64,000 nt of DNA from IMG/VR virus record IMGVR_UViG_3300043399_000877, positions 310,001 through 374,000 of that record; one strand, given 5' to 3'. A program made the translations under genes and the position numbers. The notes under the pieces were generated by a model, which saw only the letters and a list, made by a program, of their open reading frames with translations, had not been told where the DNA came from and made no database searches. Positions 28,166-52,743 of this stretch are shown here, piece by piece (the first letter of the stretch is position 1; each line of letters starts with the position of its first letter).

Positions 28166-29188
28166 TTACATCTTTCTATACTGTTCGTATAACGCTATAC
28201 TGGCAAGATTCTTCATCTTTGCCTCTACCATTATATCACCATGTTCTAGAAATCCCAGAGCCCATTCATTGCATGCATGGTTCCACATGTAATCGCTGTG
28301 CGCCCTTAGTTTGGCTTTTTTGTGTCCGGTAGCAAGCAGTCCGGCAAAATCGGGCCGTACACTAGGATCATGTTGTGACAACTGGTCTTCCCTTGATACA
28401 CTGTAATGAAAAACAGGGCGTACGCCGCGCCAGCTATCAACAATACGAGCAACCCGAGTATCGTCTGGTTCAATATATTCTCCTTCACTGTTGCACCAGT
28501 GATGGTGCAGATCTAATACCAGTGCAACATGCTTCTCAAGTTCAAGACTTGCATCGATGCCCCAGCTATTCTCGTCATTTTCGATAGTGATACTGTTACG
28601 TGCTTCCGGACTCAAACGTGGCAATACGTCGATGATTCCTTGAGGACCACGCCGGCCGCTAATATGAACGTTGCATTTGAAGTCCTGAAATTTCAAGCCA
28701 TAACCCATCCAACGGATAAGGTCAGCATGATATTCAAATTCTTCTACACTACGAGCGACAATATCATCATTATCACTTGCGAGAACAGTAAACTGGCCAG
28801 GATGCATAGACAGGCGAACATCAAGGCGCCGTGCAGCCTCACCCACACGATTGTACGCATGTTCACAATACCTTTTGACATCGCTTTGGCGCCAGAAATA
28901 ACTCCAAGAAGACTCAGTATAAAGAGGAAGCTGGTTAGAACCGAGACGGACCATCCGAAGACCATCAGGCAAACTCCCCACATACTCTACTAAATTCAAT
29001 GCGGCTTGCGCATTGTGTTTCATGATTTCCCATAGTTTATCCTCCGCTACGGAACGTTTCTGTCTGTTCATCCAAGCAACAGTTGTGCTTTTTTCAGAGT
29101 AGTTGCGTTGAATTTCTTCCAGCAATTTCACTGGCTGCTTTTGGTCTGGATGCATGTATTTACATGCGAATCCGATACGTCGTGTCAT
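28166..29188 (-). CDS. uvsE: UV-damage endonuclease
   Basis: RIGFACK, RLSMHPGQF, IENDE, LDLHHH, RAHSD, MVEAKMK. Confidence 0.93.
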   Translation of the reverse strand: MTRRIGFACKYMHPDQKQPVKLLEEIQRNYSEKSTTVAWMNRQKRSVAEDKLWEIMKHNAQAALNLVEYVGSLPDGLRMVRLGSNQLPLYTESSWSYFWRQSDVKRYCEHAYNRVGEAARRLDVRLSMHPGQFTVLASDNDDIVARSVEEFEYHADLIRWMGYGLKFQDFKCNVHISGRRGPQGIIDVLPRLSPEARNSITIENDENSWGIDASLELEKHVALVLDLHHHWCNSEGEYIEPDDTRVARIVDSWRGVRPVFHYSVSREDQLSQHDPSVRPDFAGLLATGHKKAKLRAHSDYMWNHACNEWALGFLEHGDIMVEAKMKNLASIALYEQYRKM

Positions 29189-29430: not shown

Positions 29431-29455
29431 TAGCGTAAAGTTTTAACACTGTCAA
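29427..29455 (-). promoter_or_regulatory. Sigma70-type early promoter
   Basis: TTGACA-17-TATTGT. Confidence 0.6.
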
Positions 29456-30147
29456 CACCAATTATTCTGCACCCATGAATCAGCACATTCATGAGGATTT
29501 GGCTTTCCATGAAAAACTGCAATACAGGTATCGTCGCCAAACTTTGGTGGCTCGTCTACGAGAAAATTCAAACCATTAGTGGTTTTTACCAACTGTGTTT
29601 TATTGCGCATTTCCCATTTGTAACTCATGACCCATTCATCTGGCCAAAACTCAAATTCTTTAATCTGATCATACAAATAGTCTTGATCACCGGCATACCG
29701 TGCTGTATACGATGTTTTGTTTTTTGTAAAATTATCATATACCTCTGAATGATGCCCACTTTCAAATCTAAATACGCTGCTGTTCATACGCTTCCATGAC
29801 GGAATTTGGTGACGGGTAAAATCTCTTATAATACAAAACTCTCCGGGCTTGTATTCAAAAAACTTATCTAGTGATCCAAACACCACTACATCTAAATCTA
29901 AAAACAGGATAGAACCGCTTAACGGCAAGTCATTACTCAAGAACCACAGTTTGTTCCACCATCCTGCTACTTTTATATCAGGTATATTGTATACGCTAAC
30001 AGCGGGGTCTATGCCACTACGGTCGTCAGTAAAACATGTAAATTGATATGGTAGGGACAAATTTCTCCCTACCATACTGTGCAGTCGATTTACATAGTCT
30101 GCTGAATATTTTGTACCCCACTTGAGGCACACTACGTGATTAGTCAA
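29452..30147 (-). CDS. GT-A fold glycosyltransferase (GT8-like)
   Basis: CLKWGTKY, WWNKL, FLDLDVV (DxD), NSSVF, GDQDY, FHGKPNP; probable TTG start overlapping queD end. Confidence 0.8.
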   Translation of the reverse strand: MTNHVVCLKWGTKYSADYVNRLHSMVGRNLSLPYQFTCFTDDRSGIDPAVSVYNIPDIKVAGWWNKLWFLSNDLPLSGSILFLDLDVVVFGSLDKFFEYKPGEFCIIRDFTRHQIPSWKRMNSSVFRFESGHHSEVYDNFTKNKTSYTARYAGDQDYLYDQIKEFEFWPDEWVMSYKWEMRNKTQLVKTTNGLNFLVDEPPKFGDDTCIAVFHGKPNPHECADSWVQNNWC

Positions 30148-30646
30148 GAAGGTTTTCGTTCCATTCACGATGGCCTTCGCGGAAAGCCATATTTGCTTGA
30201 GTTTCACGAACTTCAACACGGAAACACCACAAACGTTCGGCTTCTCCCGGCCCCCACATGTCCGGAATGTACACGCCGTTTACATACTTATAGAGCATGT
30301 CAGCCAAACTTTCACAGCCCAACTTGGGTAATACAGTTAGTTTGGCCATCTTTCTACGTTCCAGTTCACGATAAATGTCCATGTTGGGATCGTCTTCAGC
30401 AACCAAAAGTGTGTGATCAAATTGGTCTTCCAATACCTTTTTTAATTCTTTTAGACCGCCGTAGTCTGCTGCCCAGTTTCTAATGTCTAAGTCGTTTGTT
30501 CCAAAATAAAATTTCATACTAAAACTGTAGCCATGAATGGTATTGCAATGGCTGTCAGCCCGCCATTGTCTATAAGCACACGGGAATGCATCAATATATT
30601 CTTTTGTGCTAACATATTTGTAAGTAATTGGTTCAAATCTTGCCAT
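30140..30646 (-). CDS. queD: 6-carboxytetrahydropterin synthase
   Basis: SHCNTIHGYS, DYGGLK, FDHTLL, ESLA, VRET; SD GGAGG before ATG 30646. Confidence 0.88.
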   Translation of the reverse strand: MARFEPITYKYVSTKEYIDAFPCAYRQWRADSHCNTIHGYSFSMKFYFGTNDLDIRNWAADYGGLKELKKVLEDQFDHTLLVAEDDPNMDIYRELERRKMAKLTVLPKLGCESLADMLYKYVNGVYIPDMWGPGEAERLWCFRVEVRETQANMAFREGHREWNENLLD

Positions 30647-30722
30647 CTCTTGCCTCCATGAAGTAAGTTTGATGACACGCAGAGTATTTAAAGTGGGATG
30701 AGCGTCCGAGTCCACTATTCAT
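30647..30722 (-). promoter_or_regulatory. Structured 5' leader of queD, preQ1-I-riboswitch-like
   Basis: AGUGG-ACUCGGACGCUCAUC-CCACU-UUAAAUACUCUGCGUG; stem plus possible loop-tail pseudoknot; promoter TAGACT-17-TACAGT directly upstream. Confidence 0.5.
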
Positions 30723-30750
30723 AAACTGTAGCATAGGATTTGTAAAAAGT

Positions 30751-31134
30751 CTAGTCATTATTTGAAGAAGATGCTATTAATAAATCACCACTTCTTTCTA
30801 ACCACATTAATTCACATTCGTATTCTACAGATATATTTAATGTTTCTGTAAAATTTGTTTCTGCTATTGATATTAATATACTGGTACCTTGATCATCTAC
30901 CTTTGTTACCGGGACCGGTTTGTTTTCTGCCAACATAATTACCGATCCCACAGTACAATAATTGCTTTTTTTGATTTCTAGAATAGATTCAGTTAGTCGA
31001 TCGTGGAAGAACATTTCTGTATGGTTTATTGGATCTATATTTAAAAATTTCAAATATGTTACTCCAAACGAGATCAGTATCGCAAACGACATGCAAGAAA
31101 TTAATAACGGTACTGCATTAAATGTCCTGGTCAT
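30751..31134 (-). CDS. Membrane-anchored hypothetical protein
   Basis: N-terminal TM helix, two Cys in soluble domain. Confidence 0.55.
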   Translation of the reverse strand: MTRTFNAVPLLISCMSFAILISFGVTYLKFLNIDPINHTEMFFHDRLTESILEIKKSNYCTVGSVIMLAENKPVPVTKVDDQGTSILISIAETNFTETLNISVEYECELMWLERSGDLLIASSSNND

Positions 31135-33766: not shown

Positions 33767-33960
33767 AGTTTTTCATCCAGTGCTTGTTTGACTGACTTCC
33801 AAAATTGCTGTTTGGCAAACTCATTTGTTGTTACTAAGTTAAGTTGTTCTTCCCATTGATCCTGTTCGTCTAAATAAAACTTGATCTTATCTGTTACAAT
33901 TTCTTTTTTGTCGTTATATTTTACTGATAAAAAATATACGTATGGTCTAAATTCTGTCAT
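33763..33960 (-). CDS. Hypothetical protein
   Basis: ORF coupled to ligase. Confidence 0.55.
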   Translation of the reverse strand: MTEFRPYVYFLSVKYNDKKEIVTDKIKFYLDEQDQWEEQLNLVTTNEFAKQQFWKSVKQALDEKL

Positions 33961-35282
33961 AGTTTTTCTCCAGGTGTAAATCCACGGAATGTTTTAAAAC
34001 GTGGAAAACGCAAACTATACGTTCCATCCTGATTTTGCGTTACTGCATCAGCCCTAACTTCCACAAGAGATCCAGCAAGACGATTACGGTCACGCCAAAA
34101 AGAATCACGCTCATCGTCTGTGAATCCGCTACCAACATTAACCCTAATATCTTTCCCGTCATCTTCCCCAGCGCATACCAGAGCCCCGAGTCTTCCCGCA
34201 TTTTTTCCAGTTCCTTCTTCAACTGCTATGATTTCCAGTGTTACTTCAATAAACGGCTTCGCTTTGAGCCAGCTTGCAGTTCGTTTGCACTCATACGGCG
34301 CATCAACGTCTTTAATCATAACGCCTTCGTATCCACCCGCTACAGCCGCCTTATTGAGTTCCACAAAGCGTTGATAGCCTTCGGGAGTGTCTAGGTCAAC
34401 AGTTTCCCAGCCTAGCGACGCCACGTGTTCCAGCCGATCTGCATGATCTTCAACCCATGCACTGATCATTTCACTACGAAAGCTTTGAGGCTTGTTCCAC
34501 TTTTTGTTTTTGAAAGATCCAAGTGGGATCACATCAAACAGATTAAGCACGGCATCTTTTGCGTCGGCATTTTTCTTTCGACGTGCTTGCCGCATGAGAT
34601 CCTGAAAGCTTGCACTCATGATCTCGCCGTCAAGTACCAGGGGATAGGGAGCAGGAGATTCTTGTAGCACACTGCGAATTTCTTCAATGATGTGATCAAA
34701 ATTGTGAAATTGTTTGCCGTTGCGGCTAAACATTTCGATGCTTTTGCCGTGTGTATCATTAATTACAGTAAGCACACGAACACCATCTAGCTTTACTTCG
34801 ATTTGCTTCTTACCGGTCATCTTGCCTTCATGGTTCGCACTGTCATGTGCAAGCTGGCATTCAAAAACCGGAACTTGATATTCTGGATGCTTTTTAGTGA
34901 CCTTGTTGACAGTCTTTTCGCTCACGCCGCAGCGCAAATCTTTGATAAGGATTCTACGGTACCAATCGTTCCATTGCTTTTGGGTAGCAACATCCATGGC
35001 CAGTTTGATAGCATCACGAGCGGCATTACCGGTAAGATTTCTATACTGAAGATCGTTTGCCAGCTCTCGAAACACGGTCCACGGAAGCCCCTGCCCCGCG
35101 TTTTCGTGTTTGATCGGAACTTGCTTCACACCAAAAGTAATCATCGGATCCAAAGCCATACGAATTCCTTCAAAGAATTCGGTTAGTCCCTCGTCAACCG
35201 CCTCTGCTAGAATAGCTTCTTTTTCCAGACGGCCGTTGTGTTCTTCCAGCCGACGAATAATCCAGTCAGGTTGTGTGCGCAT
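33957..35282 (-). CDS. ATP-dependent DNA ligase
   Basis: KLDGVR (motif I), LDGEI, EGVMIK, WLKAK, VGSGF, SLRFPRF. Confidence 0.95.
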   Translation of the reverse strand: MRTQPDWIIRRLEEHNGRLEKEAILAEAVDEGLTEFFEGIRMALDPMITFGVKQVPIKHENAGQGLPWTVFRELANDLQYRNLTGNAARDAIKLAMDVATQKQWNDWYRRILIKDLRCGVSEKTVNKVTKKHPEYQVPVFECQLAHDSANHEGKMTGKKQIEVKLDGVRVLTVINDTHGKSIEMFSRNGKQFHNFDHIIEEIRSVLQESPAPYPLVLDGEIMSASFQDLMRQARRKKNADAKDAVLNLFDVIPLGSFKNKKWNKPQSFRSEMISAWVEDHADRLEHVASLGWETVDLDTPEGYQRFVELNKAAVAGGYEGVMIKDVDAPYECKRTASWLKAKPFIEVTLEIIAVEEGTGKNAGRLGALVCAGEDDGKDIRVNVGSGFTDDERDSFWRDRNRLAGSLVEVRADAVTQNQDGTYSLRFPRFKTFRGFTPGEKL

Positions 35283-44391: not shown

Positions 44392-44475
44392 TGGTGCCGC
44401 CGGGGAGACTCGAACTCCCACGACCGAAGTCACAAGCACCTCAAGCTTGCGTGGCTACCATTACACCACGGCGGC
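44392..44475 (-). tRNA. tRNA-Leu(GAG)
   Basis: Cloverleaf, long variable arm, loop TT-GAG-GT, encoded CCA. Confidence 0.9.
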
Positions 44476-44492
44476 AATTGTCCTTAATATAA

Positions 44493-44660
44493 TCATTTAA
44501 GTTTTTGTATGGCATCTTCTATTTGTTTCAACGCAAAAGTAGTAAGGAGATACTCACTTCTTTTGTCACATTTGTCGCTTAAGAAAAGTTCTAAGTTACA
44601 AATAGCAGATTTAATATCACCCTCTATTGTACCTTTTGTGTTAATACAGAACAATCCCAT
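44493..44660 (-). CDS. Small hypothetical protein
   Basis: MGLFCINTKG..., SD GAGG. Confidence 0.5.
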   Translation of the reverse strand: MGLFCINTKGTIEGDIKSAICNLELFLSDKCDKRSEYLLTTFALKQIEDAIQKLK

Positions 44661-44675
44661 GTAACTTCCTCTAAA

Positions 44676-44752
44676 TGGTACCCCCGGCAGGACTCTAACC
44701 CACAACCCTCGCGTTCGAAGCGCGATGCTCTATACAATTGAGCTACGGAGGC
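44676..44752 (-). tRNA. tRNA-Arg(TCG)
   Basis: TCGCG-CT-TCG-AA-CGCGA; T-loop TTAGAGT; CCA. Confidence 0.85.
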
Positions 44753-44757
44753 AAAAA

Positions 44758-45006
44758 TTATCTAAGTCGAGGATTCTGGACAAACCGTCCACCGGCACCG
44801 CGAACTTTAGGACGAACTATCTTGTTCGCCTTCATCTGAGTGGCTGCGATATCACATCCGTCATTGAAACTGGGACTGGAACTGTCACATGGATCCAGTT
44901 TATTACGACTACGAGCGTAGCGATATCCAGCGGCATGACCACTGCAATCTTTGGTGCAGGGTCTGCCCTGGAAAGTTAGTTCGGTTATGATATCACGTAA
45001 CAACAT
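44758..45006 (-). CDS. Late-expressed small protein
   Basis: ATAAATACTGT-ATG; CTKDCSGHAAGY. Confidence 0.65.
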   Translation of the reverse strand: MLLRDIITELTFQGRPCTKDCSGHAAGYRYARSRNKLDPCDSSSPSFNDGCDIAATQMKANKIVRPKVRGAGGRFVQNPRLR

Positions 45007-45021
45007 ACAGTATTTATGCCA

Positions 45022-45387
45022 TTACAGCAGTTTTAGATCCCCGGTTATGGGTTGCAGACGCTCGTGCGTGTCTGGGCCCACAGCAATGCAGGTGTTGGTG
45101 GGCGTGCCGTTAAACACAGTCAAGCCTGCGTCCGTGACAAGCTCAGCGATGAGCCCTGCCGCACGGGCGCGATTGTATACGTCCAGCAACTCTTCCTCGC
45201 TGCTGACACCCACTGCAATCTTGGTAAACTTACCTTCTAGCCATTCTTTGACTCTCGGGTCAGCAAAGTTCACAAGAGTGGCTTTCATGCTTGCATGTGC
45301 GCCCTGCGCGATCTCTTTACCACGCGGCATCTTGAGATCTTTTCTCATTACAATAATCTGTTTCATAGCAGTATCCTTAGTCGTCAA
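45022..45387 (-). CDS. Peptidyl-tRNA hydrolase type 2 (Pth2)
   Basis: KQIIVMRKDLKM..GK..AQGAHA, DAGLT, TCIAVGP, ITGDLKLL. Confidence 0.93.
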   Translation of the reverse strand: MTTKDTAMKQIIVMRKDLKMPRGKEIAQGAHASMKATLVNFADPRVKEWLEGKFTKIAVGVSSEEELLDVYNRARAAGLIAELVTDAGLTVFNGTPTNTCIAVGPDTHERLQPITGDLKLL

Positions 45388-46348
45388 CAGTTACTTCGGT
45401 CTTTGTCTTTTTGGTCTTGATCAGGGAGTAGATGACTCCGGCAGCCAAGATAGCAAAGGTTATAGCCAGTGATATCTCCGGTGGAAATTTTGCCAAGCCA
45501 AGAAGATCGGCTATAAAGATTTTGCTTCCTATAAACACTAGAAGTATAGCCAGTGCTGTTTTTAGGTATTCAAATCTGTGCAGTACCGCCGCAAGAGCAA
45601 AGTACAAGGCTCGCAATCCGAGTATTGCAAAAATATTGCTGGTATAGACAATGAACGGATCTGTTGTAATAGCAAAAACAGCAGGCACACTATCGACTGC
45701 AAAAATCAAATCTGCAAGTTCAACAAGAACCAGTGCAAGGAACAGCGGAGTCACAAACCATTTGCCGGCATGTTTTACGAAGAAACTGTTGCCGTGTAGT
45801 CGTTCGGTTACGTTGAATTTTGCCCTCATGAACTTTAGGGCAGGATTGTTTTCCAAGTCTGTTTCGGACTCTTTTACAAACAACATCTTGACGCCGGTAA
45901 AGATCAAGAACGCAGCAAAAATGTAAAGTATCCAACCAAACTGGCTAACAAGCGTTGCACCCAGCCCAATCATAATACCACGAAGGACGATAACGCCCAA
46001 AATACCCCAGAAAAGAACGCGGTGTTGATATTCTTTTGGAATAGAGAAGAAGCTGAAAATAAGAGCTATAACAAAGATGTTATCGAGCGCCAGTGTTTTC
46101 TCTACAACAAAAGCAGTTAGGTATTCAAATGACTGAACTGCACCGATCTGATACCAGACAAAACCGGAAAATGCCAGTCCTATTGCGATATAAACCGCTG
46201 AAAGTCTTAGACTTTCAGCAACACCGATTTCATGAGAATCTCGATGCAAAACACCTAGGTCAAAAACCAGCAGTGCAAGGACGATTGCCAAAAACAGCAA
46301 CCACATCCACACCGGAGTGCCTAGAAAGAGAAGTGTTAAAAATTCCAA
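45377..46348 (-). CDS. TerC/Alx-family membrane protein
   Basis: EKTLALDNIFV, QHRVLFWG, DLIFAVDSVPA, SNIFAILGLRALYF. Confidence 0.93.
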   Translation of the reverse strand: MEFLTLLFLGTPVWMWLLFLAIVLALLVFDLGVLHRDSHEIGVAESLRLSAVYIAIGLAFSGFVWYQIGAVQSFEYLTAFVVEKTLALDNIFVIALIFSFFSIPKEYQHRVLFWGILGVIVLRGIMIGLGATLVSQFGWILYIFAAFLIFTGVKMLFVKESETDLENNPALKFMRAKFNVTERLHGNSFFVKHAGKWFVTPLFLALVLVELADLIFAVDSVPAVFAITTDPFIVYTSNIFAILGLRALYFALAAVLHRFEYLKTALAILLVFIGSKIFIADLLGLAKFPPEISLAITFAILAAGVIYSLIKTKKTKTEVTVDD

Positions 46349-46374
46349 TTATTTTCCCCTGTATGAGTCGTTAT

Positions 46375-46590
46375 TTACTGGTCAGTTCGCCATCTTTTGC
46401 GACAATCTGGACAGAAAAAATCTATCCAATAACTGTCAGCACTAGGGTCATAATTACCGGTGTTGCTGTCATATTTTTTAGTCACACCGGGATGAGTGCA
46501 TAATGCCTGCAACTTCGCAAGTTCATGGGCTAAACGTTCTTCTCTGCGATCGATACTAGCCCATTTACGCCTAACCTGCGCTGGCGTCAT
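46375..46590 (-). CDS. Small Zn-binding hypothetical protein
   Basis: CTH...CPDC. Confidence 0.6.
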   Translation of the reverse strand: MTPAQVRRKWASIDRREERLAHELAKLQALCTHPGVTKKYDSNTGNYDPSADSYWIDFFCPDCRKRWRTDQ

Positions 46591-47015
46591 GATGCAGCCT
46601 CCTTTTCAATATATCGTGAACACTTTGCACGATCCGTCATGTTGCGTTCGGCTAGGTCTTCCCAAAATTTTTCATTTGGTTTTACCACGCTGTACGCGAG
46701 TTGGCCCCCAAAATAGACCAAACACTCTCTGTTGTAGTTGCTGCTGAGAACCACAGTATATGCCGTGCTCACAGCAGCGCCTCCGATGCCCCCGTGCCCG
46801 AGTGCTGTGCTGCCCCAGGTTTGTGGGAACATTCCGATTACGGAAAAATCACGAGTGGTGTGACGACGTGTTTTCTTAACGGTGGCGTTCTTATCACCAC
46901 TTCGGCGGAATTCTTCCCAATCACGAGAGTCGTACTCAATCTCGGAAAATCCCGCGTACTCAGCATGTGCCAAAACTGCGGCAAGTTCTCCGATTGGATT
47001 ATCAGTGTAGGTCAT
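46587..47015 (-). CDS. Conserved hypothetical phage protein
   Basis: FPQTWGSTALG.GGIGG. Confidence 0.7.
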   Translation of the reverse strand: MTYTDNPIGELAAVLAHAEYAGFSEIEYDSRDWEEFRRSGDKNATVKKTRRHTTRDFSVIGMFPQTWGSTALGHGGIGGAAVSTAYTVVLSSNYNRECLVYFGGQLAYSVVKPNEKFWEDLAERNMTDRAKCSRYIEKEAAS

Positions 47016-47358
47016 CGTAAGGTTCTCCTCGAGTGCGCAACACTCTCCATGTGTATTCTTTTTCTACTCGTTCTGCGTAACGTTTGCGCATCCCATCCGG
47101 ATCAGTCATCCAGTATTTCATACCTTCCGGGTGTCCATAGCTGTGCGCTGGCGCATTGAAATTGAGCCAACGAACAATATCCGGAAGTCGCTGGATGTTA
47201 ATATGATCAGCACTGGTGATTGCCCCGTAAAGGTTGTTGCACAACACATTTGTCAAAAAACCTCCGGGCGGTAATCCGTAAACCAGATAGTTATCTAGAG
47301 ATTTTCTAGTGTGTTCCGGAATTTCTCGTCCATAGCTGTCACTATCAAAATCAATCAT
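47002..47358 (-). CDS. Hypothetical protein
   Basis: PPGGFLTNVLCNNL...AD. Confidence 0.65.
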   Translation of the reverse strand: MIDFDSDSYGREIPEHTRKSLDNYLVYGLPPGGFLTNVLCNNLYGAITSADHINIQRLPDIVRWLNFNAPAHSYGHPEGMKYWMTDPDGMRKRYAERVEKEYTWRVLRTRGEPYDDLH

Positions 47359-47764
47359 GCACATTTGTTGTCCCATTCGGAAAAAATACCATGGTTGGCT
47401 TGCCGGTTTTCTTCGCATAGTCGTGCGTATACCAAGTGCCGCCGTTGTTCTGCCACGAATTTTGATATGGCACAACTAACAGCACATCACACTCATTGAC
47501 TATCTGTCTATTTCTTGCGAAATAACTGAGTGGTTCTCGAAAATCGTCTGATCGGTGGTGCGCCCTAAGTTCTGTTTTAATCGGTGGATGACAGACCACC
47601 TTAATACCCATTTCCGCAGCCAATATAGCAACCTGTTCATCTACTCCCACACAGTCTCCGTGATGCAATTCTGTGATGCCGTTTCGACTGGTTAGATAGT
47701 TTCTAACCAGTCGAAACTGTTCATCATTCATTCCGGAACGGGTACCAGTTACGCCAACTTTCAT
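47351..47764 (-). CDS. SLOG/DprA-like nucleotide-binding protein
   Basis: VGVTGTR, HHGDCVGVD, ARNRQIV, GGTWYT. Confidence 0.7.
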   Translation of the reverse strand: MKVGVTGTRSGMNDEQFRLVRNYLTSRNGITELHHGDCVGVDEQVAILAAEMGIKVVCHPPIKTELRAHHRSDDFREPLSYFARNRQIVNECDVLLVVPYQNSWQNNGGTWYTHDYAKKTGKPTMVFFPNGTTNVHD

Positions 47765-48279
47765 TATCTCTCGTTCCATTGTCCAACAATGCTCATAGCA
47801 TGTTTCATATGCTTGTAAAGCAATCCGTTTTCTGGATCAGTTCGTACTAGGCGTTTTTTGCCCAGCACTTCGTCAAATCGATAAGCGTTGTCATCAAACA
47901 AGATGAAGTCACGCACGTCAGTTCCGTAGTTAGCAAGGTACTCTTGAACCTCGTGTGCGCGGTCATTAAGACCTGCACGTTGCCAGATAACGTTATCCGG
48001 ATCAGTTTTCCACGGGCTTGCAAGTTTTCCACGGAAGCCGCTGTTGCCGAAGGCAGCAGAGACCCAGTGCAGCACCATATTGTCATCGTTACGGAGATAA
48101 TTTTTCCAGGTTGACATAAGAACAAACTCAACCGGGTAACGGTCGTGAAGTTTGTTCATGAAATCAACAGCAACCGGGTCAAAGCGATGCCACATTTCAT
48201 AAGTGGCGTTATGTGCATAATGCACACGGCTGCTGGTAAAGACGCCGTCGATGTCTAAAAAAACTAGATATCTGCTCAT
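47764..48279 (-). CDS. HAD-family phosphatase (Swiss-Army-knife RNA repair type)
   Basis: FLDIDGV, STW, R..EV, ILFDD, GL. Confidence 0.8.
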   Translation of the reverse strand: MSRYLVFLDIDGVFTSSRVHYAHNATYEMWHRFDPVAVDFMNKLHDRYPVEFVLMSTWKNYLRNDDNMVLHWVSAAFGNSGFRGKLASPWKTDPDNVIWQRAGLNDRAHEVQEYLANYGTDVRDFILFDDNAYRFDEVLGKKRLVRTDPENGLLYKHMKHAMSIVGQWNER

Positions 48280-48302
48280 AGCACCACACCTTTCTTAGAG
48301 TT

Positions 48303-48331
48303 AATATAGTGTAGATATATCTGTGTGTCAA
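48303..48331 (-). promoter_or_regulatory. Sigma70-type promoter
   Basis: TTGACA-17-TATATT. Confidence 0.7.
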
Positions 48332-48345
48332 GTAAGATTACGATC

Positions 48346-48900
48346 TTACCAGACACTCCAGATGTGTTTTTTACCGAGATAGGTGTCGGGATAGGGAAGA
48401 TAATCCCAGTCTTGATCTTTGAGGACACGACGTTCAAGCTGACGAACAGCGTTGCGAACAGTCTCTTTGCTGAGAGTTTTGTAAGCAGTGTTGCAGCCAG
48501 TTTCGTTGCCGTATCCGTCTCGAGTACGTTTTGCAAATTCGCGACGAGCCCAGTCACGTTCTGCTTCCCAATCAATGTCACAAGGTTCGTAACGGAACTT
48601 GCTAACATAATAACGATAACGTTCGGGCAATGCACGAACATAGCAACTGTACATAATGCTTTCGGGATTGTTCCAACAAAACCAATAGTTTTTGCGGACT
48701 ACCCGGCAGTCAGCTTCGTAACGTGCTTCTGCTGCTGCAACTTCGTGTTGGTATTCTTCCTGAGTTTTCTTCACTTTTTTACGGTGATACATGCCAGGAT
48801 ATCTGGCGGCGCGAAGCGCCAGATCTTTTATATGCTCATCCACGTATTGAGATTCCGATTTGGAATGATCAAACTTGGGTTTACGGTACGTTCTACTCAT
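48346..48900 (-). CDS. Basic hypothetical protein (MSRTYRK start)
   Basis: SD AAGGAG partly inside an upstream hairpin. Confidence 0.7.
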   Translation of the reverse strand: MSRTYRKPKFDHSKSESQYVDEHIKDLALRAARYPGMYHRKKVKKTQEEYQHEVAAAEARYEADCRVVRKNYWFCWNNPESIMYSCYVRALPERYRYYVSKFRYEPCDIDWEAERDWARREFAKRTRDGYGNETGCNTAYKTLSKETVRNAVRQLERRVLKDQDWDYLPYPDTYLGKKHIWSVW

Positions 48901-48908
48901 TTTGACTC

Positions 48909-48957
48909 CTTATAAGCTATTAGCTCATAAGTCGTCGTAAAACTTTCTGTATCTCAT
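48909..48957 (-). promoter_or_regulatory. 10-codon uORF (MRYRKFYDDL) plus SD-occluding hairpin
   Basis: uORF 48957-48925; 10-bp stem CTTATGAGCT/AGCTTATAAG. Confidence 0.55.
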
Positions 48958-48972
48958 TTCGTTTCCTTTATT

Positions 48973-49077
48973 TGGTGGAGAGGGATGGAATCGAACCATC
49001 GACGCGGCAAGTTACCAGCCTGCCCGCTCTACCCAGACCAACTTCAAGATTGGTGATCTTGCTGAGCTACCGTCTCC
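48973..49077 (-). tRNA. Atypical tRNA-Thr(GGT)-like RNA with D-loop insertion
   Basis: GCTC/GAGC D-stem with 34-nt loop, 6-bp anticodon stem with CT-GGT-AA loop, normal T-arm, CCA. Confidence 0.6.
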
Positions 49078-49084
49078 GTTATTT

Positions 49085-49160
49085 TGGCGCCCCCGGCAGG
49101 AGTCGAACCCACAACCTAGGGAGTAGAAATCCCTTGCTCTTCCAGTTGAGCTACGAAGGC
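49085..49160 (-). tRNA. tRNA-Arg(TCT)
   Basis: AGGGA-TT-TCT-AC-TCCCT; CCA. Confidence 0.92.
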
Positions 49161-49393
49161 ATGTCATTTAGTAATTCATTTAGAACTGCGTCAACCAGTT
49201 CTTCTACGAACTCATCTTCTTCACTTGCGAGTACAAAATCGTCTGCACTCATAGTACCAACCACCCATGCATCCCAGTGCCGTGTGCAAAACATTGCATC
49301 AGACAAAGATTCTCTAACGCGGTCTCGGAGTCGCCGTTTTAACGGCTCCGACACAGTTGCAATCAGGGCACGTCGGTCAAGTGCAGTGGTCAC
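49151..49393 (-). CDS. Hypothetical protein
   Basis: CTRHWDAWVVGTMSADDF motif; stop lies within tRNA-Arg(TCT). Confidence 0.65.
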   Translation of the reverse strand: MTTALDRRALIATVSEPLKRRLRDRVRESLSDAMFCTRHWDAWVVGTMSADDFVLASEEDEFVEELVDAVLNELLNDMPS

Positions 49394-49833
49394 AACACGT
49401 AAACCACTGGTTCAACGTCAGTCATTTCATCTTCGATGATCTGACTGATAATGTTCCAATTCCCGCCGCCGAGCCCAGCACCGATTTGCGGCATAGCAAC
49501 CTGCGTTTCACCACTTTGACGAAGAACGCTGTTGATGGTGCGCATACAATCAGCCACTGCTTCGTAGTTCACAAAACGACTACCGTCTCGACCATACAAA
49601 TGCTGAGTAATTGCGTTGATGATTACTTTGCCATTTGAAGGTACAAACTGTACATCACCCAGCTTGAGGCCATGCTCGTCGTACTGCTCAACATAAAACC
49701 GGTATGCGTCAAAGTGGTCGTCACGAACTATACGTGCAACACCTGAACCCATAACGCCCTGGGCATTGCAACCGTGTGCAATGTGCAGGATGTCGGTCTC
49801 GAAAAGATTGCCCTTGCGGTATTGGATTTTCAT
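49390..49833 (-). CDS. Macro domain (ADP-ribose processing) protein
   Basis: GNLF, HGCNAQGVMGSGVA, MPQIGAGLGGGNW. Confidence 0.9.
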   Translation of the reverse strand: MKIQYRKGNLFETDILHIAHGCNAQGVMGSGVARIVRDDHFDAYRFYVEQYDEHGLKLGDVQFVPSNGKVIINAITQHLYGRDGSRFVNYEAVADCMRTINSVLRQSGETQVAMPQIGAGLGGGNWNIISQIIEDEMTDVEPVVYVL

Positions 49834-49836
49834 CTT

Positions 49837-49950
49837 TTACTTCCGGAAAAGATTGGTAACTTTTGCTTGCAGGTCTTTTGCCCATTGCGGCTGAGGAAGG
49901 TTCCAACCAATACCCAGTCCGATAGCGATTCCAACTGCTAGTGTAAACAT
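49837..49950 (-). CDS. 37-aa membrane peptide
   Basis: Hand-translated MFTLAVGIAIGLGIGWNLPQPQWAK...; SD AAGGAG; promoter upstream. Confidence 0.65.
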   Translation of the reverse strand: MFTLAVGIAIGLGIGWNLPQPQWAKDLQAKVTNLFRK

Positions 49951-49972
49951 CTGTGTCTCCTTTGTTAACTGT

Positions 49973-50001
49973 AATATAGTGCCGGGTGTTGCTGTTGTCA
50001 A
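49973..50001 (-). promoter_or_regulatory. Sigma70-type promoter
   Basis: TTGACA-17-TATATT. Confidence 0.7.
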
Positions 50002-50013
50002 GCAACAATACGA

Positions 50014-50586
50014 TTAATCGTCTATTGCCAATGGATCTGTGATAACTGGAACCGATCCACGAAACATAAGATTTGATATTCCGAAATCTAAATCATATTG
50101 CCCGTGTTGTTTTAATTTTTCCAATACTGCCATGATTTCTGGATAAGACCTTGATATATCAGCAACTACTCGTTGATACTGGTCACGATCTCTTCCATCA
50201 TTTGAGAGTATGTAATCGATCATATTGAACACATTACGATTATCTGTGCTGCGCGGATCAAAACTATCAAGCCGTTCCATTCTCACTACGCGAAAGTTGT
50301 TGGGAAGTTTTATAATATTTCCACGAAGTTTTGGAACATGAGGGTTCCCGCGTAGCTGCATAATGTACTGTAAATACTGATCATAACCGGCGTCGTTTTT
50401 ATAAATTTTAACAACGTAATCGGCGCCCGGTTTAGCCAACACATGGGCATATAATCCGCTCCCCAAAGATTCAAACTCAAATCCACGCTGCTGTAGTTGT
50501 TTGACGTAATCTTCTACGCCCAAGACCTCTTGGGCAGAAGCATACGCTGGGTTTTTTCTGTATCCGGTTAATTCACGTAATCGCAT
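50014..50586 (-). CDS. Protein-kinase-like protein (T7 gp0.7-like)
   Basis: LGSGLYAHV, VVKI, HVPK, MERL, DFGISNLM, ITDP; TATAAATACTGT-ATG start. Confidence 0.7.
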   Translation of the reverse strand: MRLRELTGYRKNPAYASAQEVLGVEDYVKQLQQRGFEFESLGSGLYAHVLAKPGADYVVKIYKNDAGYDQYLQYIMQLRGNPHVPKLRGNIIKLPNNFRVVRMERLDSFDPRSTDNRNVFNMIDYILSNDGRDRDQYQRVVADISRSYPEIMAVLEKLKQHGQYDLDFGISNLMFRGSVPVITDPLAIDD

Positions 50587-50600
50587 ACAGTATTTATATT

Positions 50601-50678
50601 TGGTACTCCCGAGAGGATTCGAACCCCTGACCTTCGCGTTCGTAGCGCGACGCTCTAATTCCACTGAGCTACGGGAGT
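50601..50678 (-). tRNA. tRNA-Arg(ACG)
   Basis: TCGCG-CT-ACG-AA-CGCGA; CCA. Confidence 0.92.
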
Positions 50679-50679
50679 A

Positions 50680-51162
50680 TTAATTTATCGATCGATTATC
50701 GGCAAATTGAATAGTTTTTCCAACATAGTTGGCTTCGGCACCGGTCATCATAGCGCGACCGGAGGATTCCAGATCCCAAACAAAATCTGCCATAAATTCT
50801 TGAATGTCTCCGGTCACCTTTTTTAGTTTGTTGACCACCGCTGCGTTTATTGGTCTTACAGCTTCCAATTCTTGCTGGACTTCTGGTGGCAGGTTTCCCG
50901 TCACCGGTACCCATTGTGGTGGATTGGCGTTTCCGAGTTCTGAATGTATTTTGCCCATAACACCGGTTTGGGGGTCATACTCGGTACCCTTGGTTGACTC
51001 ATCTTCAACAGCATTTGCAAGCATCATGAATGTTCTTGCAACGTCCGGTGCAGCTTTAATCAACCAAACATCACCGTCTGCAAATTCATCTATATAACCT
51101 ATGAGAACAGTATTTGCACTTTCATTAATACTGTCTAATTTATTCAGTAATGATCTAAACAC
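50680..51162 (-). CDS. Late hypothetical protein
   Basis: ATAAATA, SD AAGGAG, GTG start MFRSLLNKLDSINES. Confidence 0.65.
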   Translation of the reverse strand: MFRSLLNKLDSINESANTVLIGYIDEFADGDVWLIKAAPDVARTFMMLANAVEDESTKGTEYDPQTGVMGKIHSELGNANPPQWVPVTGNLPPEVQQELEAVRPINAAVVNKLKKVTGDIQEFMADFVWDLESSGRAMMTGAEANYVGKTIQFADNRSIN

Positions 51163-51197
51163 AGCGACTCCTTTTTTATTATTTATGTGAAAGTCTC

Positions 51198-51272
51198 TGG
51201 TGCAGCCTGGAGGATTTGAACCTCCGACATCTGTCGAGTCAGGACAGCGCTCTACCACTGAGCTAAGGCTGC
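51198..51272 (-). tRNA. tRNA-Val(GAC)
   Basis: CTGTC-CT-GAC-TC-GACAG; CCA. Confidence 0.88.
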
Positions 51273-51273
51273 A

Positions 51274-51351
51274 TGGAACTGGCTGGGGGATTTGAACCCG
51301 CCGCTACAAGATCCACAATCTTGTGTGCTAAACCGCTAACACTAAACCAGC
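51274..51351 (-). tRNA. tRNA-His(GTG)
   Basis: CAAGA-TT-GTG-GA-TCTTG; G1:U72, no G-1. Confidence 0.88.
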
Positions 51352-51355
51352 ATTA

Positions 51356-51547
51356 TTAGATTACAATGAACTTGTGATCAGTCAATTCTTCTCTAAGAAC
51401 AAAGTCCTCGTCGAGTTTTACAACTTGCCCTTCTAAAACTCGTTCAATAAGTTTCTTGCTCTCTGCAAGGCTCATTCCAGTGTGCTGTCTCACAGACAGT
51501 ATAGCACTATATGAATTTGCGCCTTTTTTAAAACCTATGATTTGCAT
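51356..51547 (-). CDS. Ribosomal protein L7/L12 C-terminal-like domain
   Basis: AILSVRQHTGMSLAESKKLIE resembles VIK.VR..TGLGLKEAK.LVE. Confidence 0.65.
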   Translation of the reverse strand: MQIIGFKKGANSYSAILSVRQHTGMSLAESKKLIERVLEGQVVKLDEDFVLREELTDHKFIVI

Positions 51548-51563
51548 ACCGATACTCCTCTAT

Positions 51564-51634
51564 TGGTGCCCCCTGTAGGAATCGAACCTACCGATCCGGG
51601 CTTAGGACGCCTGAGCCGGCCCAGCGGAGAGGGC
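51564..51634 (-). tRNA. Atypical tRNA-Arg(CCT) with reduced D-arm
   Basis: 7-bp acceptor, loop GT-CCT-AA, GTAGG-TTCGATT-CCTAC, CCA; 71 nt. Confidence 0.6.
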
Positions 51635-51640
51635 TAAATT

Positions 51641-51718
51641 TGGCGGATAAGGTTGGACTCGAACCAACAACGCAAGGCCTCAACCTGGCACCCGCTCTAC
51701 CTCTTGAGCTACCGATCC
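51641..51718 (-). ncRNA. tRNA-like RNA with degenerate anticodon arm (GTT-centred loop)
   Basis: Canonical D- and T-arms and CCA; anticodon arm GCC-AGGTTGA-GGC irregular. Confidence 0.55.
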
Positions 51719-51729
51719 GCATAATATTT

Positions 51730-51879
51730 TGTCAGCGAACTACAAGCTGGTGGACTCGAACGCACCATCGCCGGCTGTACGCCGGTGTCCTATCCTTTAG
51801 ACGAAACTTCAATCTTATCAGCACTTTTCCGCACCCCGGCGTGGGTTGGGAAGTTACTGGCAACAAAGGTTCGCTGACA
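51730..51879 (-). ncRNA. About 150-nt structured RNA containing a tRNA-like domain
   Basis: Perfect 11-bp closing stem TGTCAGCGAAC/GTTCGCTGACA enclosing a hairpin and D/anticodon/T-like arms; no CCA. Confidence 0.6.
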
Positions 51880-51902
51880 TGGACGATCGCCGCGCCCTAA
51901 CT

Positions 51903-51979
51903 TGGTTGTCCCTCTCGGAGTCGAACCGAGGACCCCAGTCTTATCAGGACTGTGCTCTAACCACCTGAGCTAAGGGACA
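51903..51979 (-). tRNA. tRNA-Ile(GAT)
   Basis: CAGTC-CT-GAT-AA-GACTG; CCA. Confidence 0.93.
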
Positions 51980-51987
51980 GAAATTTT

Positions 51988-52064
51988 TGGTGTGCCGGGT
52001 GAGATTTGAACCCACGACCTTGGAGTTAAGAGCTCCCTGCTCTAGACCACTGAGCTACCGGCGC
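51988..52064 (-). tRNA. tRNA-Lys(CTT)
   Basis: GGAG-CT-CTT-AA-CTCC; CCA. Confidence 0.9.
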
Positions 52065-52070
52065 ATTATT

Positions 52071-52137
52071 TGGAAGATACGCTCGCTCTCCCAGCCAGGG
52101 CACTTTCGCTCCCCAACAAAAGCACAAGCGTATCATC
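52071..52137 (-). ncRNA. CCA-ended long hairpin RNA
   Basis: GATACGCTTG/CGAGCGTATC stem, GAAA apical loop, ends TTCCA. Confidence 0.4.
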
Positions 52138-52144
52138 GAAATAA

Positions 52145-52231
52145 TGGTGAACCGGGTAGGATTTGAACCTACGTTGGCATTGCTGCTACAGATTAAAAGT
52201 CTGTCCCCATCGGCCTCTCGGGCACCGGTCC
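52145..52231 (-). tRNA. tRNA-Lys(TTT) with class II (long variable arm) body
   Basis: ACAGA-CT-TTT-AA-TCTGT; variable arm GCA-GCAA-TGC; CCA. Confidence 0.8.
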
Positions 52232-52370
52232 TAATGAATTCTGTGAAGTTTTGCTTTTCACGTTTGCGTTTCGATTTATATGGTTTATCGTGTGCGCCCG
52301 CAACTCGAAACCGTGCTGCGGCCACAAACGGATTCCTCTGTTTAGGAATCTTCTGACGTTTTCGTTTCAT
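52232..52370 (-). CDS. Small basic protein, possible alternative ribosome-rescue factor; no stop before the tRNA
   Basis: MKRKRQKIPKQRNPFVAAARFRVAGAHDKPYKSKRKREKQNFTEFI; frame continues through tRNA genes to 52026. Confidence 0.55.
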
Positions 52371-52512
52371 CTAAAAATCTTTCCTTGTATTTGCGTATAG
52401 CTGCTATCAGTGCCGCTGTGGGCGCGGGTGGTCGGTTACACGCTTCTACGATACGGTCATACTCTTCCTGAGTCAACAGTATCGTCTCGGTCTCCTGATC
52501 GGTCGTCTTCAT
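52342..52512 (-). CDS. DUF1778/TacA-antitoxin C-terminal-like peptide (56 aa)
   Basis: Hand-translated MKTTDQETETILLTQEEYDRIVEACNRPPAPTAALIAAIRKYKERF... Confidence 0.6.
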   Translation of the reverse strand: MKTTDQETETILLTQEEYDRIVEACNRPPAPTAALIAAIRKYKERFLDETKTSEDS

Positions 52513-52645: not shown

Positions 52646-52661
52646 TTTTTACTCCTGTTAA

Positions 52662-52737: not shown

Positions 52738-52743
52738 ATTATT

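What the first reader, a model, noticed from the sequence alone, without database searches (positions are those of the whole stretch)
30647..30753. preQ1-I-like pseudoknot leader in front of phage queD
Seen: promoter, then AGUGG-[ACUCGGACGCUCAUC]-CCACU-UUAAAU-ACUCUGCGUGUCAUC. Loop ACGC can pair with GCGU; ACUC-N6-UCAUC occurs twice; a small CUUC/GAGG hairpin covers the SD. Recalled preQ1-I type I riboswitch: GUGGUUCG..ACCAUCCCAC.UAAAAAAACUAG, sharing GUGG...CAUCCCAC..UAAA. QueD lies in the preQ0/7-deazaguanine pathway phages use for DNA modification. Inference: a variant phage riboswitch sensing preQ0/preQ1 or a pterin, or a QueD autoregulatory site.
Basis: partly seen in the sequence, partly recalled or inferred. 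Interest (0 to 1): 0.65.

Follow-up and report, generated by a model that had tools for sequence, protein, structure and literature searches.

The report
Phage queD leader pseudoknot, riboswitch-like
The leader of a jumbo phage's queD-like gene folds into a small RNA pseudoknot, conserved in over 300 phage contigs, that resembles the preQ1-I riboswitch but matches no catalogued RNA family and appears wired to switch translation on rather than off.

Summary
Folded alone it is no more stable than shuffled sequence (z about -0.2). No Rfam 15 family matches it, PreQ1 included, even at E<=10.

Comparison shows it is real. I found the element in 305 phage contigs (251 distinct sequences). In about 95% a QueD/PTPS-type ORF starts within 90 nt.

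Covariation supports an H-type pseudoknot:
- P1 has 5 bp and is paired in 99-100% of cells.
- A further pair is A-U in 163 sequences, G-C in 87, mismatched in 1.

The pocket-side features match preQ1-I type I: a G-C floor, an invariant C before the P1 3' strand, and an A-rich L3. L1, L2 and P2 differ.

The P2 3' strand is also the 5' arm of a hairpin that sequesters the SD or AUG in 161 of 163 instances. Pseudoknot formation should therefore free the ribosome site.

Best reading: a new, essentially phage-only, riboswitch-like ON element. The ligand is unknown and untested; I infer a guanine-like heterocycle.

The parts
30718..30753 (-). Promoter-like hexamers. TTTACA (30746-30741), 17 nt, TATGAA (30723-30718). 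Alternatively TAGACT (30753-30748), 17 nt, TACAGT (30730-25). The upstream gene's stop codon TAG is at 30753-30751.
   Evidence: Read from the sequence. Neither pair passed the consensus scan. Relatives place the -10 end 5-11 nt before P1, which favours the weaker second pair. No RNA data are available. Uncertain.
30712..30716 (-). P1 5' strand, AGUGG.
   Evidence: Pairs with 30692-30696. Paired in 99.7-100% of cells across relatives. Three of five pairs show compensatory changes, and the top two G-C pairs are invariant.
30707..30711 (-). L1, ACUCG. The family pattern is N-C-U followed by 1-7 variable nt.
   Evidence: Alignments A3-A5. C-U is nearly invariant.
30699..30706 (-). P2 5' strand. 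P2b is GACGC (30706-30702), then a conserved U (30701), then P2a, which is CA (30700-30699).
   Evidence: P2b is 80% paired with 5 of 5 pairs compensatory. For P2a, C-G is found in 71 of 75 rows. The A-U/G-C pair counts AU 38, GC 33, other 4; the 4 others are misaligned rows. Over 251 unique sequences the same pair counts 163 A-U, 87 G-C and 1 mismatch.
30697..30698 (-). L2, UC. The C at 30697 is invariant and directly precedes the P1 3' strand, the position of the preQ1-I specificity cytosine.
   Evidence: Invariant column. The comparison with preQ1-I comes from PMC11625349.
30692..30696 (-). P1 3' strand, CCACU.
30682..30691 (-). L3, UUAAAUA plus CUC. The family pattern is NNANANA followed by Y-U-C.
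   Evidence: A at positions 3 and 7 is invariant and A at position 5 nearly so. The segment is always 7 nt before YUCYGC.
30674..30681 (-). P2 3' strand. P2a is UG (30681-30680), then a conserved C (30679) opposite U30701, then P2b, which is GUGUC (30678-30674).
   Evidence: G·U pairs in P2 fit only this strand.
30641..30677 (-). Alternative (sequestering) hairpin. UGUCAUC (30677-30671) pairs with GAUGGCA (30647-30641, which includes the AUG). Inside it, CUU/AAG and CUUC/GAGG cover the SD GGAGG (30657-30653).
   Evidence: MFE fold. It shares 4 nt with the P2 3' strand. Blocking those nt lowers its stability from -11.2 to -3.0 kcal/mol. The same overlap occurs in 161 of 163 family members.
30140..30646 (-). 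The regulated gene, a QueD-like (PTPS/T-fold) protein of 168 aa. ATG is at 30646-30644.
   Evidence: Pfam PF01242 at 54 bits. PHROG 2389 'QueD-like' at E 4e-36. It is 52-54% identical to QueD-like proteins of phages ACP17 and R5C, which sit in FolE/QueE/QueC/QueF/TGT clusters.
29452..30219 (-). Downstream gene, glycosyltransferase-like and probably co-transcribed. The listed GTG start overlaps the end of queD, so the true start may lie just after the queD stop.
   Evidence: PHROG 1962 glycosyltransferase at E 1.8e-26. ORF list.

Best explanation
**What it is**
The 5' leader of the phage queD-like mRNA is a cis-acting RNA switch built on an H-type pseudoknot of about 45 nt.
- P1 has 5 bp.
- P2 forms between the P1 loop and the 3' tail. 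It has 3-7 variable pairs, a conserved U·C mismatch, and two conserved pairs (C-G and R-Y).
- L2 is 2 nt and ends in an invariant C next to the G-C pair that closes P1.
- L3 is 10 nt and A-rich, and would lie in the P1 minor groove.

**How it works**
- The P2 3' strand is also the 5' arm of a downstream hairpin that buries the Shine-Dalgarno sequence or the start codon.
- The two structures therefore cannot both form.
- When the pseudoknot is stabilised, the inhibitory hairpin loses 4-8 kcal/mol and queD is translated. When it is not, translation is blocked.
- I infer that stabilisation comes from a small ligand held between P1 and P2 and paired to the invariant C.

**Shown versus inferred**
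- Shown by comparison: the pseudoknot, its conserved unpaired nucleotides, its exclusive link to queD-type genes, and the mutually exclusive hairpin.
- Inferred: that a ligand is involved, that it is a guanine-like heterocycle (a 7-deazaguanine such as preQ1, preQ0 or CDG, or the pterin substrate made by FolE), and that the effect is activation.
For: **Conservation**
- The covariance model finds the element in 74 of the 80 loci encoding the closest relatives of the protein.
- It occurs once in the window (53 bits, E 2.6e-16) and once in the 381,886-bp phage genome (E 1.9e-16).
- Pattern scans bring the total to 305 loci and 251 distinct sequences.

**Covariation**
- 90% of cells are paired, against 71-72% in shuffles (0 of 500 reach the observed value) and 33-53% with slid partners.
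- P1 is 99-100% paired.
- All five P2b pairs show compensatory changes.

**The extra pair**
- A-U in 163 sequences, G-C in 87, mismatch in 1.
- Scans for the G..U and A..C combinations returned 11 and 13 stretches, none of them a real instance.

**RNA, not protein or the opposite strand**
- Loop lengths run from 13 to 19 nt, not in multiples of 3, so this is not coding sequence.
- The G·U pairs fit only the queD strand.

**Expression platform**
- In 161 of 163 instances the P2 3' nucleotides pair, in the fold of the downstream region alone, with the SD (76 instances), with AUG plus the next codons (84), or across both (1). The platforms differ in sequence.
- The partner sequence mimics the P2 5' strand, for example GACUU / AAGUC / GACUU.
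- Blocking the P2 3' strand costs the hairpin a median of 3.9 kcal/mol, and 8.2 in the window.

**Gene link**
- 235 of 251 distinct sequences have a QueD/PTPS-signature ORF within 90 nt. These include divergent subfamilies and a canonical CxxxHGH QueD.
- In five exceptions looked at (L051, L104, L167, L174, L220) queD is the second gene after the motif; in L104 this is a degenerate second copy.

**Position**
In 37 relatives a promoter scoring at least 10 of 12 puts the start site at or just before P1.

**Likeness to preQ1-I**
The G-C floor, the invariant C preceded by U, the A-rich L3, and a tail C followed by a U that pairs with an A are as in the type I structure (PMC11625349 and PMC10018353).
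Against: - No ligand binding, and no RNA data of any kind. No RNA-seq run holds this sequence.
- The window sequence alone folds no better than shuffles.
- No Rfam model, PreQ1 included, recognises it.
- An end-product ON switch on a biosynthetic gene is counter-intuitive. The direction rests on secondary-structure logic and nearest-neighbour energies that ignore pseudoknot and tertiary terms.
- A compact pseudoknot close to the SD can itself lower translation, as in the C. antarcticum riboswitch (PMC10018353).
- The pathway's end use in these phages is unclear. There is no TGT/DpdA hit in six genomes, QueF is present in only two of the six, and the QueC hits are weak.
- The window's best-scoring promoter would start transcription inside P1.
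Confidence: 0.58

Rival explanations
1. A ligand-independent RNA device. The pseudoknot forms during transcription and keeps the ribosome site open on fresh transcripts. Later refolding, or 5' processing that removes P1 and the P2 5' strand, lets the hairpin close and shuts queD off. This would act as a timer or a stability element.
For: The mutually exclusive structures need no ligand in principle. The element sits at the very 5' end of the transcript in relatives, where a 5' hairpin could also protect the mRNA. Phage T4 uses transcript-specific RBS hairpins (my own knowledge).
Against: About 14 unpaired nucleotides are invariant or nearly so: N-C-U, the U·C mismatch, the C of L2, A3/A5/A7 of L3, and Y-U-C. 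That is far more than a simple competing helix needs, and they are laid out like a known ligand pocket. The element is tied to a single gene family across very different phages and promoters.
Confidence: 0.15
2. A protein-binding operator. QueD itself, or another phage or host protein, binds the pseudoknot and controls translation. The precedent is the 5' pseudoknot of the T4 gene 32 mRNA, which nucleates autoregulation by gp32.
For: The exclusive association with queD-type genes is what autoregulation would give. Phage precedent exists (my own knowledge).
Against: The downstream proteins span at least three groups with under 50% identity, including a canonical QueD, yet the RNA core is unchanged. 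T-fold enzymes are not known RNA binders (my own knowledge). The pocket layout matches a small-molecule aptamer.
Confidence: 0.13
3. An ordinary preQ1-I riboswitch (OFF type) that is simply too divergent for the Rfam model. Under this reading preQ1 binding represses queD by feedback.
For: The topology and pocket-side nucleotides are shared with type I. queD is the first committed step of the pathway. This genome encodes FolE, a QueE-like protein and QueF. A relative has a Vut_1/YhhQ-type transporter gene near queD.
Against: RF00522 does not hit this site at E<=10, nor any family a compact G-C-type relative. The SD is never part of P2. Instead the P2 3' strand pairs with the SD or AUG in the alternative fold in 161 of 163 cases, which is ON wiring. 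L1, L2 and P2 differ systematically.
Confidence: 0.07

Closest known systems
preQ1-I riboswitch, type I (Rfam RF00522; e.g. Carnobacterium antarcticum, PDB 7REX/8FB3 as cited in PMC10018353)
   Same: - H-type pseudoknot with a 5-bp P1 closed by a conserved G-C 'floor'.
- An invariant cytosine directly 5' of the P1 3' strand, preceded by U.
- An A-rich L3.
- A conserved C at the end of the tail, followed by a U that pairs with an A of the loop.
- Sits upstream of queuosine-precursor genes.
   Different: - L1 is 5-10 nt (N-C-U...) instead of UU.
- L2 is 2 nt instead of 5.
- P2 covers 8 or more positions, with a conserved U·C mismatch, instead of 3-4.
- L3 carries an extra Y-U before the C.
- RF00522 gives no match.
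- The P2 3' strand is an anti-SD/anti-AUG sequence (predicted ON), not the SD (OFF).
- Found essentially only in phage contigs.
Guanidine-III riboswitch (ykkC-III)
   Same: A small classic H-type pseudoknot aptamer with a triple-helix-like loop-helix contact (abstract of PMC5696562). It is thought to turn translation on when the ligand stabilises the pseudoknot (my own knowledge).
   Different: Unrelated sequence, ligand and gene context. No Rfam match here.
Phage T4 gene 32 mRNA 5' pseudoknot (autoregulatory operator)
   Same: An H-type pseudoknot at the 5' end of a phage mRNA leader that controls translation initiation (my own knowledge).
   Different: It is protein-operated and acts through cooperative binding to an unstructured AU-rich stretch. 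It has no competing SD hairpin that shares a strand with the pseudoknot.
Glutamine riboswitch (glnA motif) in marine myophages
   Same: One of the few riboswitches reported in phage genomes (PMC9004378).
   Different: That class is shared with bacteria and is present in Rfam. The element here matched no Rfam family and had one hit among 185,579 prokaryote species genomes.

Membership tests
preQ1-I riboswitch (RF00522) | Covariance-model score at or above the gathering threshold (39 bits) | tested here: not met
   No match at gathering score on the window. No match at E<=10 on 401 nt or 63 nt. On the whole phage genome at E<=10 four weak hits appear elsewhere and none at this site. A compact G-C-type relative also gives no match.
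preQ1-I riboswitch (RF00522) | H-type pseudoknot: a 5-bp P1, with P2 formed between the P1 loop and the 3' tail | tested here: met
   Covariation counts on three alignments.
preQ1-I riboswitch (RF00522) | Strictly conserved 'specificity' cytosine immediately 5' of the P1 3' strand (UC in type I, AC in types II and III), above a conserved G-C closing pair | tested here: met
   The C at 30697 was required by my search patterns, so its invariance rests (invariant column C22 in alignment A1, which was built from protein-found loci with this C also required by the extraction regex). It is preceded by U in most A-U-type members and by A, U or C in the G-C-type members. The top two P1 pairs are always G-C. 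The feature definition is from PMC11625349.
preQ1-I riboswitch (RF00522) | A-rich L3 running directly into the P2 3' strand | tested here: inconclusive
   L3 is NNANANA, which is A-rich, but three more conserved nt (Y-U-C) come before P2. Type I also ends its tail in a C (PMC11625349).
preQ1-I riboswitch (RF00522) | Two-nucleotide L1 with a conserved U (U6) right after P1 | tested here: not met
   L1 is N-C-U plus 1-7 nt, and the first position varies among A, U and C.
preQ1-I riboswitch (RF00522) | The P2 3' strand contains SD nucleotides (or feeds a terminator), so the ligand represses | tested here: not met
   The SD lies 12-25 nt downstream. The P2 3' strand pairs with the SD or AUG in the alternative fold.
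preQ1-I riboswitch (RF00522) | Binds preQ1 or preQ0 | not testable with these tools
   Needs in-line probing or ITC.
preQ1-II / preQ1-III riboswitches | Match to their Rfam models (HLout pseudoknots of about 80-100 nt) | tested here: not met
   All 4227 Rfam families were scanned at E<=10 with no hit.
Riboswitch (general) | A conserved aptamer in a 5' leader, plus an expression platform whose pairing excludes an aptamer helix | tested here: met
Riboswitch (general) | Direct, protein-free ligand binding that changes expression | not testable with these tools
QueD / PTPS (the regulated protein) | T-fold PTPS domain | tested here: met
   PF01242 at 54.3 bits against a cut-off of 22.4. PHROG 2389.
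QueD / PTPS (the regulated protein) | NCBIfam QueD equivalog score, and the three zinc-binding His residues (E. coli H16, H31, H33) | tested here: not met
   TIGR03367 scores 35.7 bits against a cut-off of 89. In the alignment to E. coli QueD (4ntm), Tyr stands at the H16 and H33 positions while the Cys and H31 are kept. That these are the zinc ligands is from my own knowledge.
QueD / PTPS (the regulated protein) | Genomic linkage to FolE, QueE and other 7-deazaguanine genes | tested here: met
   Relatives show a queE-queD-folE order. ACP17 and R5C have full clusters. In this genome the genes are dispersed: FolE and a QueE-like gene at 288-289 kb, QueF at 15 kb.

The most novel reading that the evidence does not exclude
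This is a previously undescribed riboswitch class, or a fourth and structurally expanded type of preQ1-I. It is confined to phages and senses a 7-deazaguanine or pterin intermediate. It activates, rather than represses, translation of QueD, the first committed enzyme of 7-deazaguanine synthesis. On this reading phages took over and rewired a host-type aptamer to time their own modified-base metabolism.
Probability: 0.42. Interest if true: 0.85.

Novelty: new variant of a known kind. Interest (0 to 1): 0.76.

Why it matters
- Riboswitches are rare in phages (PMC9004378). The few reported ones I saw there were a class shared with bacteria (glutamine) and a cyanophage psbA candidate.
- This is a well-defined motif in several hundred contigs. 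It had one hit among 185,579 prokaryote species genomes, on an 8-kb MAG contig. Rfam 15 does not hold it, and it was not found in the papers searched.
- It controls the first committed step of 7-deazaguanine synthesis, the pathway behind queuosine and phage DNA hypermodification.
- If it binds preQ1 or preQ0, it would be an ON-type member of a family in which the review I read describes only repressing switches. It would also show how a minimal aptamer pocket tolerates a rebuilt 'ceiling'.
- If it binds something else, such as the pterin substrate, guanine or CDG, it is a new ligand class.
- Either way it offers a compact aptamer of about 45 nt for testing, and a handle on what these jumbo phages do with QueD when no DpdA is detectable.

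Tried and rejected
- **Rfam.** I scanned at gathering score on the window, at E<=10 on 401 and 63 nt, on 16 related or pathway loci, and on a compact relative. Only tRNAs and one chance snoRNA hit came back.
- **RF00522 on the whole phage genome.** Four weak hits appeared elsewhere and none at the site.
- **Single-sequence folding.** Not significant.
Rejected by covariation.
- **DNA similarity to GenBank phages.** No match.
- **Consensus promoter and terminator scan.** It lists no promoter or terminator inside the leader.
- **Reading the leader as coding.** An in-frame GTG at 30715 would extend the ORF. I rejected this because loop lengths vary by non-multiples of 3 and the changes are RNA-compensatory.
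- **A late-promoter reading of the A-rich L3.** Considered and not favoured. Only alternate positions are fixed, and a separate ATAAATA/ATAAGTA-like motif lies upstream of P1 in relatives (by eye).
- **Bacterial genomes.** One hit, on an 8-kb MAG contig.
- **Public RNA runs.** None hold the sequence.
- **Literature.** Searches for a queD, preQ0 or 7-deazaguanine motif or for phage riboswitches turned up nothing describing this element. McCown 2014 could not be read.
- **Not used.** The large protein searches, structure prediction and complex prediction were not needed.
Full report
**Setting.** The window is bases 310001-374000 of a 381,886-bp IMG/VR phage record, a jumbo phage that CheckV rates complete. 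Near-identical DNA occurs in freshwater, estuary and aquaculture metagenomes from several studies. The finding lies on the minus strand. It occupies the 104-nt gap between a 127-aa ORF (stop TAG at 30753-30751) and a 168-aa ORF (ATG 30646-30644, CDS 30140-30646). The 168-aa protein belongs to the PTPS/QueD T-fold family: PF01242 at 54 bits, and PHROG 2389 'QueD-like' at E 4e-36.

**The observation.** Taken alone the leader is unremarkable. Its minimum free energy is within 0.3 sd of dinucleotide shuffles. No Rfam 15 family matches at the gathering score, or at E<=10 on 401 or 63 nt. RF00522 (PreQ1) run over the whole phage genome at E<=10 does not hit this site.

**Comparative evidence.**
- A search of IMG/VR with the protein gave 80 loci at 79-92% identity. 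Their upstream regions share an obvious element.
- A covariance model built with P1 only finds it in 74 of those 80 loci. It occurs once in the window (30670-30718, 53 bits) and once in the whole genome.
- On the model-derived alignment, P1 (AGYGG/CCRCU) is paired in 99.7% of cells, with compensatory changes at three of five pairs.
- A pseudoknot helix, P2, joins the five nucleotides before 'UCAUC' to the five after an invariant YUCYGC. It is paired in 80% of cells with compensatory changes at all five pairs.
- Overall 89.8% of cells pair, against 71.3% in shuffles (0 of 500 reach it) and 37-49% when partners are slid.
- A second set, found by a DNA pattern, gives the same numbers.
The same strand slid 2 nt towards the 3' end scores 81.7%.

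**A further helix element.**
- Position 3 of 'UCAUC' and position 4 of 'YUCYGC' change together.
- Four pattern scans of IMG/VR tested this. G..U and A..C returned 11 and 13 stretches, and none has a P1 or a queD gene.
- In a mixed alignment the pair counts AU 38, GC 33, other 4. The 4 others are rows with a 6-nt L2 that are misaligned. The neighbouring C-G is found in 71 of 75 rows.
- Over all 251 distinct sequences the counts are 163 A-U, 87 G-C and 1 mismatch.
- P2 therefore continues across a conserved U·C mismatch into two conserved pairs. L2 shrinks to N plus the invariant C. L3 becomes NNANANA plus Y-U-C.

**Final architecture in window coordinates (minus strand).**

| Element | Sequence | Coordinates |
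|---|---|---|
| P1 5' strand | AGUGG | 30716-30712 |
| L1 | ACUCG | 30711-30707 |
| P2b 5' strand | GACGC | 30706-30702 |
| Mismatch U | U | 30701 |
| P2a 5' strand | CA | 30700-30699 |
| L2 | UC | 30698-30697 |
| P1 3' strand | CCACU | 30696-30692 |
| L3 | UUAAAUACUC | 30691-30682 |
| P2a 3' strand | UG | 30681-30680 |
| Mismatch C | C | 30679 |
| P2b 3' strand | GUGUC | 30678-30674 |

Three points confirm this is an RNA on this strand. Loop lengths range from 13 to 19 nt, so the region is not coding. The G·U pairs are valid only on the queD strand. In 37 relatives a strong sigma-70-type promoter ends 5-11 nt (most often 7) before P1, so the element starts the transcript.

**The window's own promoter is unclear.** TTTACA-17-TATGAA ends 1 nt before P1. 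A weaker TAGACT-17-TACAGT has the usual spacing. No RNA data exist to decide between them.

**Expression platform.**
- I folded the region from the end of YUCYGC to +13 of the ORF. In 161 of 163 instances the P2b 3' nucleotides are paired there. In 76 they pair with the SD core, for example CCUAUG...CAUAGG. In 84 they pair with the G of AUG plus the next codon, for example UGUCAUC...GAUGGCA in the window. In one the pairing spans both.
- The partner sequence copies the P2 5' strand, for example GACUU / AAGUC / GACUU. Two upstream and downstream segments thus compete for one strand.
- Forbidding the P2 3' nucleotides from pairing weakens the hairpin by a median of 3.9 kcal/mol. In the window the change is from -11.2 to -3.0.
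- This is the layout of a riboswitch expression platform, and it predicts that pseudoknot formation opens the ribosome site.
- The energies ignore pseudoknot and tertiary terms, so the direction is an inference.

**Gene association and pathway.**
- Of 251 distinct sequences, 235 have an ORF with the PTPS/QueD signature starting within 90 nt. The proteins fall into 8 groups at 60% identity and 3 at 50%. They include a canonical CxxxHGH QueD.
- In five exceptions looked at, queD is the second gene after the motif. It follows a cupin, a methyltransferase or a small ORF.
- Relatives that lack the motif have queD directly behind a QueE-like gene and ahead of folE.
- The closest proteins in cultured phages, at 52-54% identity (ACP17 and R5C), sit among FolE, QueE, QueC, QueF and TGT genes. 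They carry the same unusual AYRQW...SHCxxIHGY motif.
- This genome encodes FolE and a divergent QueE-like protein (288-289 kb), QueF (15 kb), and a weak QueC-like PP-loop protein (271 kb). No TGT/DpdA was found.
- Five other large motif-bearing genomes also lack a PF01702 hit, and only one has QueF.
- The gene is therefore a QueD analogue by context. The idea that these phages use the pathway to modify their DNA is not supported by what I could detect.

**Comparison with known systems.**
- According to the review PMC11625349, class I preQ1 riboswitches are H-type pseudoknots. The ligand stacks between P1 and P2 on a conserved G-C floor. It pairs with a strictly conserved cytosine just 5' of the P1 3' strand (UC in type I, AC in types II and III). 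It is read by a U of L1 and an A of the A-rich L3. Type I adds a conserved C at the end of the tail.
- The C. antarcticum sequence is UGUGG UU CGCAA CCAUC CCACA UAAAAAAAC UAGGAGG, with an A12-U32 pair in the ceiling (PMC10018353).
- The phage element shares the floor, the cytosine with its preceding U, the A-rich L3, and the tail C followed by a pyrimidine that pairs with a loop purine.
- It differs in several respects. L1 is 5-10 nt starting N-C-U. L2 is 2 nt rather than 5. P2 is longer and contains a U·C mismatch. Two extra tail nucleotides are present. The SD plays no part in P2.
- It fails the Rfam model, so I do not file it as a member of RF00522. It works like a relative of that family with a rebuilt ceiling and inverted logic.

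**Distribution and prior description.**
- A stringent pattern found the commonest variant once among 185,579 prokaryote species genomes, on an 8-kb MAG contig.
- Literature searches found no description of this element.
- Phage riboswitches are described as rare (PMC9004378).

**Verdict.**
- The structure is real; I put this at over 0.95.
- It acts in cis on queD translation through a competing hairpin; I consider this likely.
- That it is a ligand-sensing ON riboswitch I put at about 0.58.
- A guanine-like ligand is suggested by the invariant cytosine and by the pathway, but nothing here tests it.
- The rivals are a ligand-free folding device, a protein operator, and a divergent ordinary OFF-type preQ1-I switch.

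Noticed in passing
window 44395-53400, minus strand: An array of 14 tRNA genes, all at or above Rfam's gathering score.
   Followed up: no
G000:C1:241626-271200 (outside the window): Fourteen radical-SAM (PF04055) genes, all on the + strand, clustered within about 30 kb. They are followed by a weak QueC-like PP-loop gene at 271.5 kb. Their purpose is unknown.
   Followed up: partly
window 30140-30646 (protein residues 25 and 41): The QueD-like protein and its phage relatives, including ACP17 and R5C, have Tyr where E. coli QueD has His16 and His33. By my recollection these are two of the three zinc ligands. The motif reads AYRQW...SHCxxIHGY. The family still sits in QueE/FolE clusters.
   Followed up: partly
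L104:6-54, and L047:1358-1383 / L058:2303-2328: Degenerate or partial second copies of the element lie 0.6-1 kb upstream of the intact one. In L104 the copy has P1 ACCAG/CUGGU, hexamer CUUCGC and no clear P2, and it precedes a 309-aa ORF that looks methyltransferase-like by eye (no family scan run).
   Followed up: partly
Upstream of P1 in many relatives (e.g. L099, L102, L109, L134, L148): Where no sigma-70-type promoter is present, a motif like ATAAATA or ATAAGTA lies about 8-14 nt before P1. It recalls T4-type late promoters (TATAAATA). Seen by eye and not quantified.
   Followed up: no
L051:3796-4404; L167 and L174 downstream of queD; L104:1735-3515: The neighbours of queD in relatives include a Vut_1/YhhQ-type transporter, a KdsA/DAHP-synthase-family gene, a cupin and a methyltransferase (Pfam hits). 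Also seen, without a family hit, are a recurring 'ILLPTRGRT' ORF of about 245-277 aa and an ORF that looks like an NAD-dependent epimerase/dehydratase by eye. This hints at a sugar-linked pathway.
   Followed up: partly
window 28166-29188 and 33957-35282, minus strand: A UvdE UV-endonuclease homologue (PF03851), and a 441-aa ORF that by eye looks like an ATP-dependent DNA ligase (not tested).
   Followed up: no
window 45494-45534, plus strand: A weak hit of the new covariance model (13.2 bits, E 0.04) inside the tRNA region. Probably chance.
   Followed up: no
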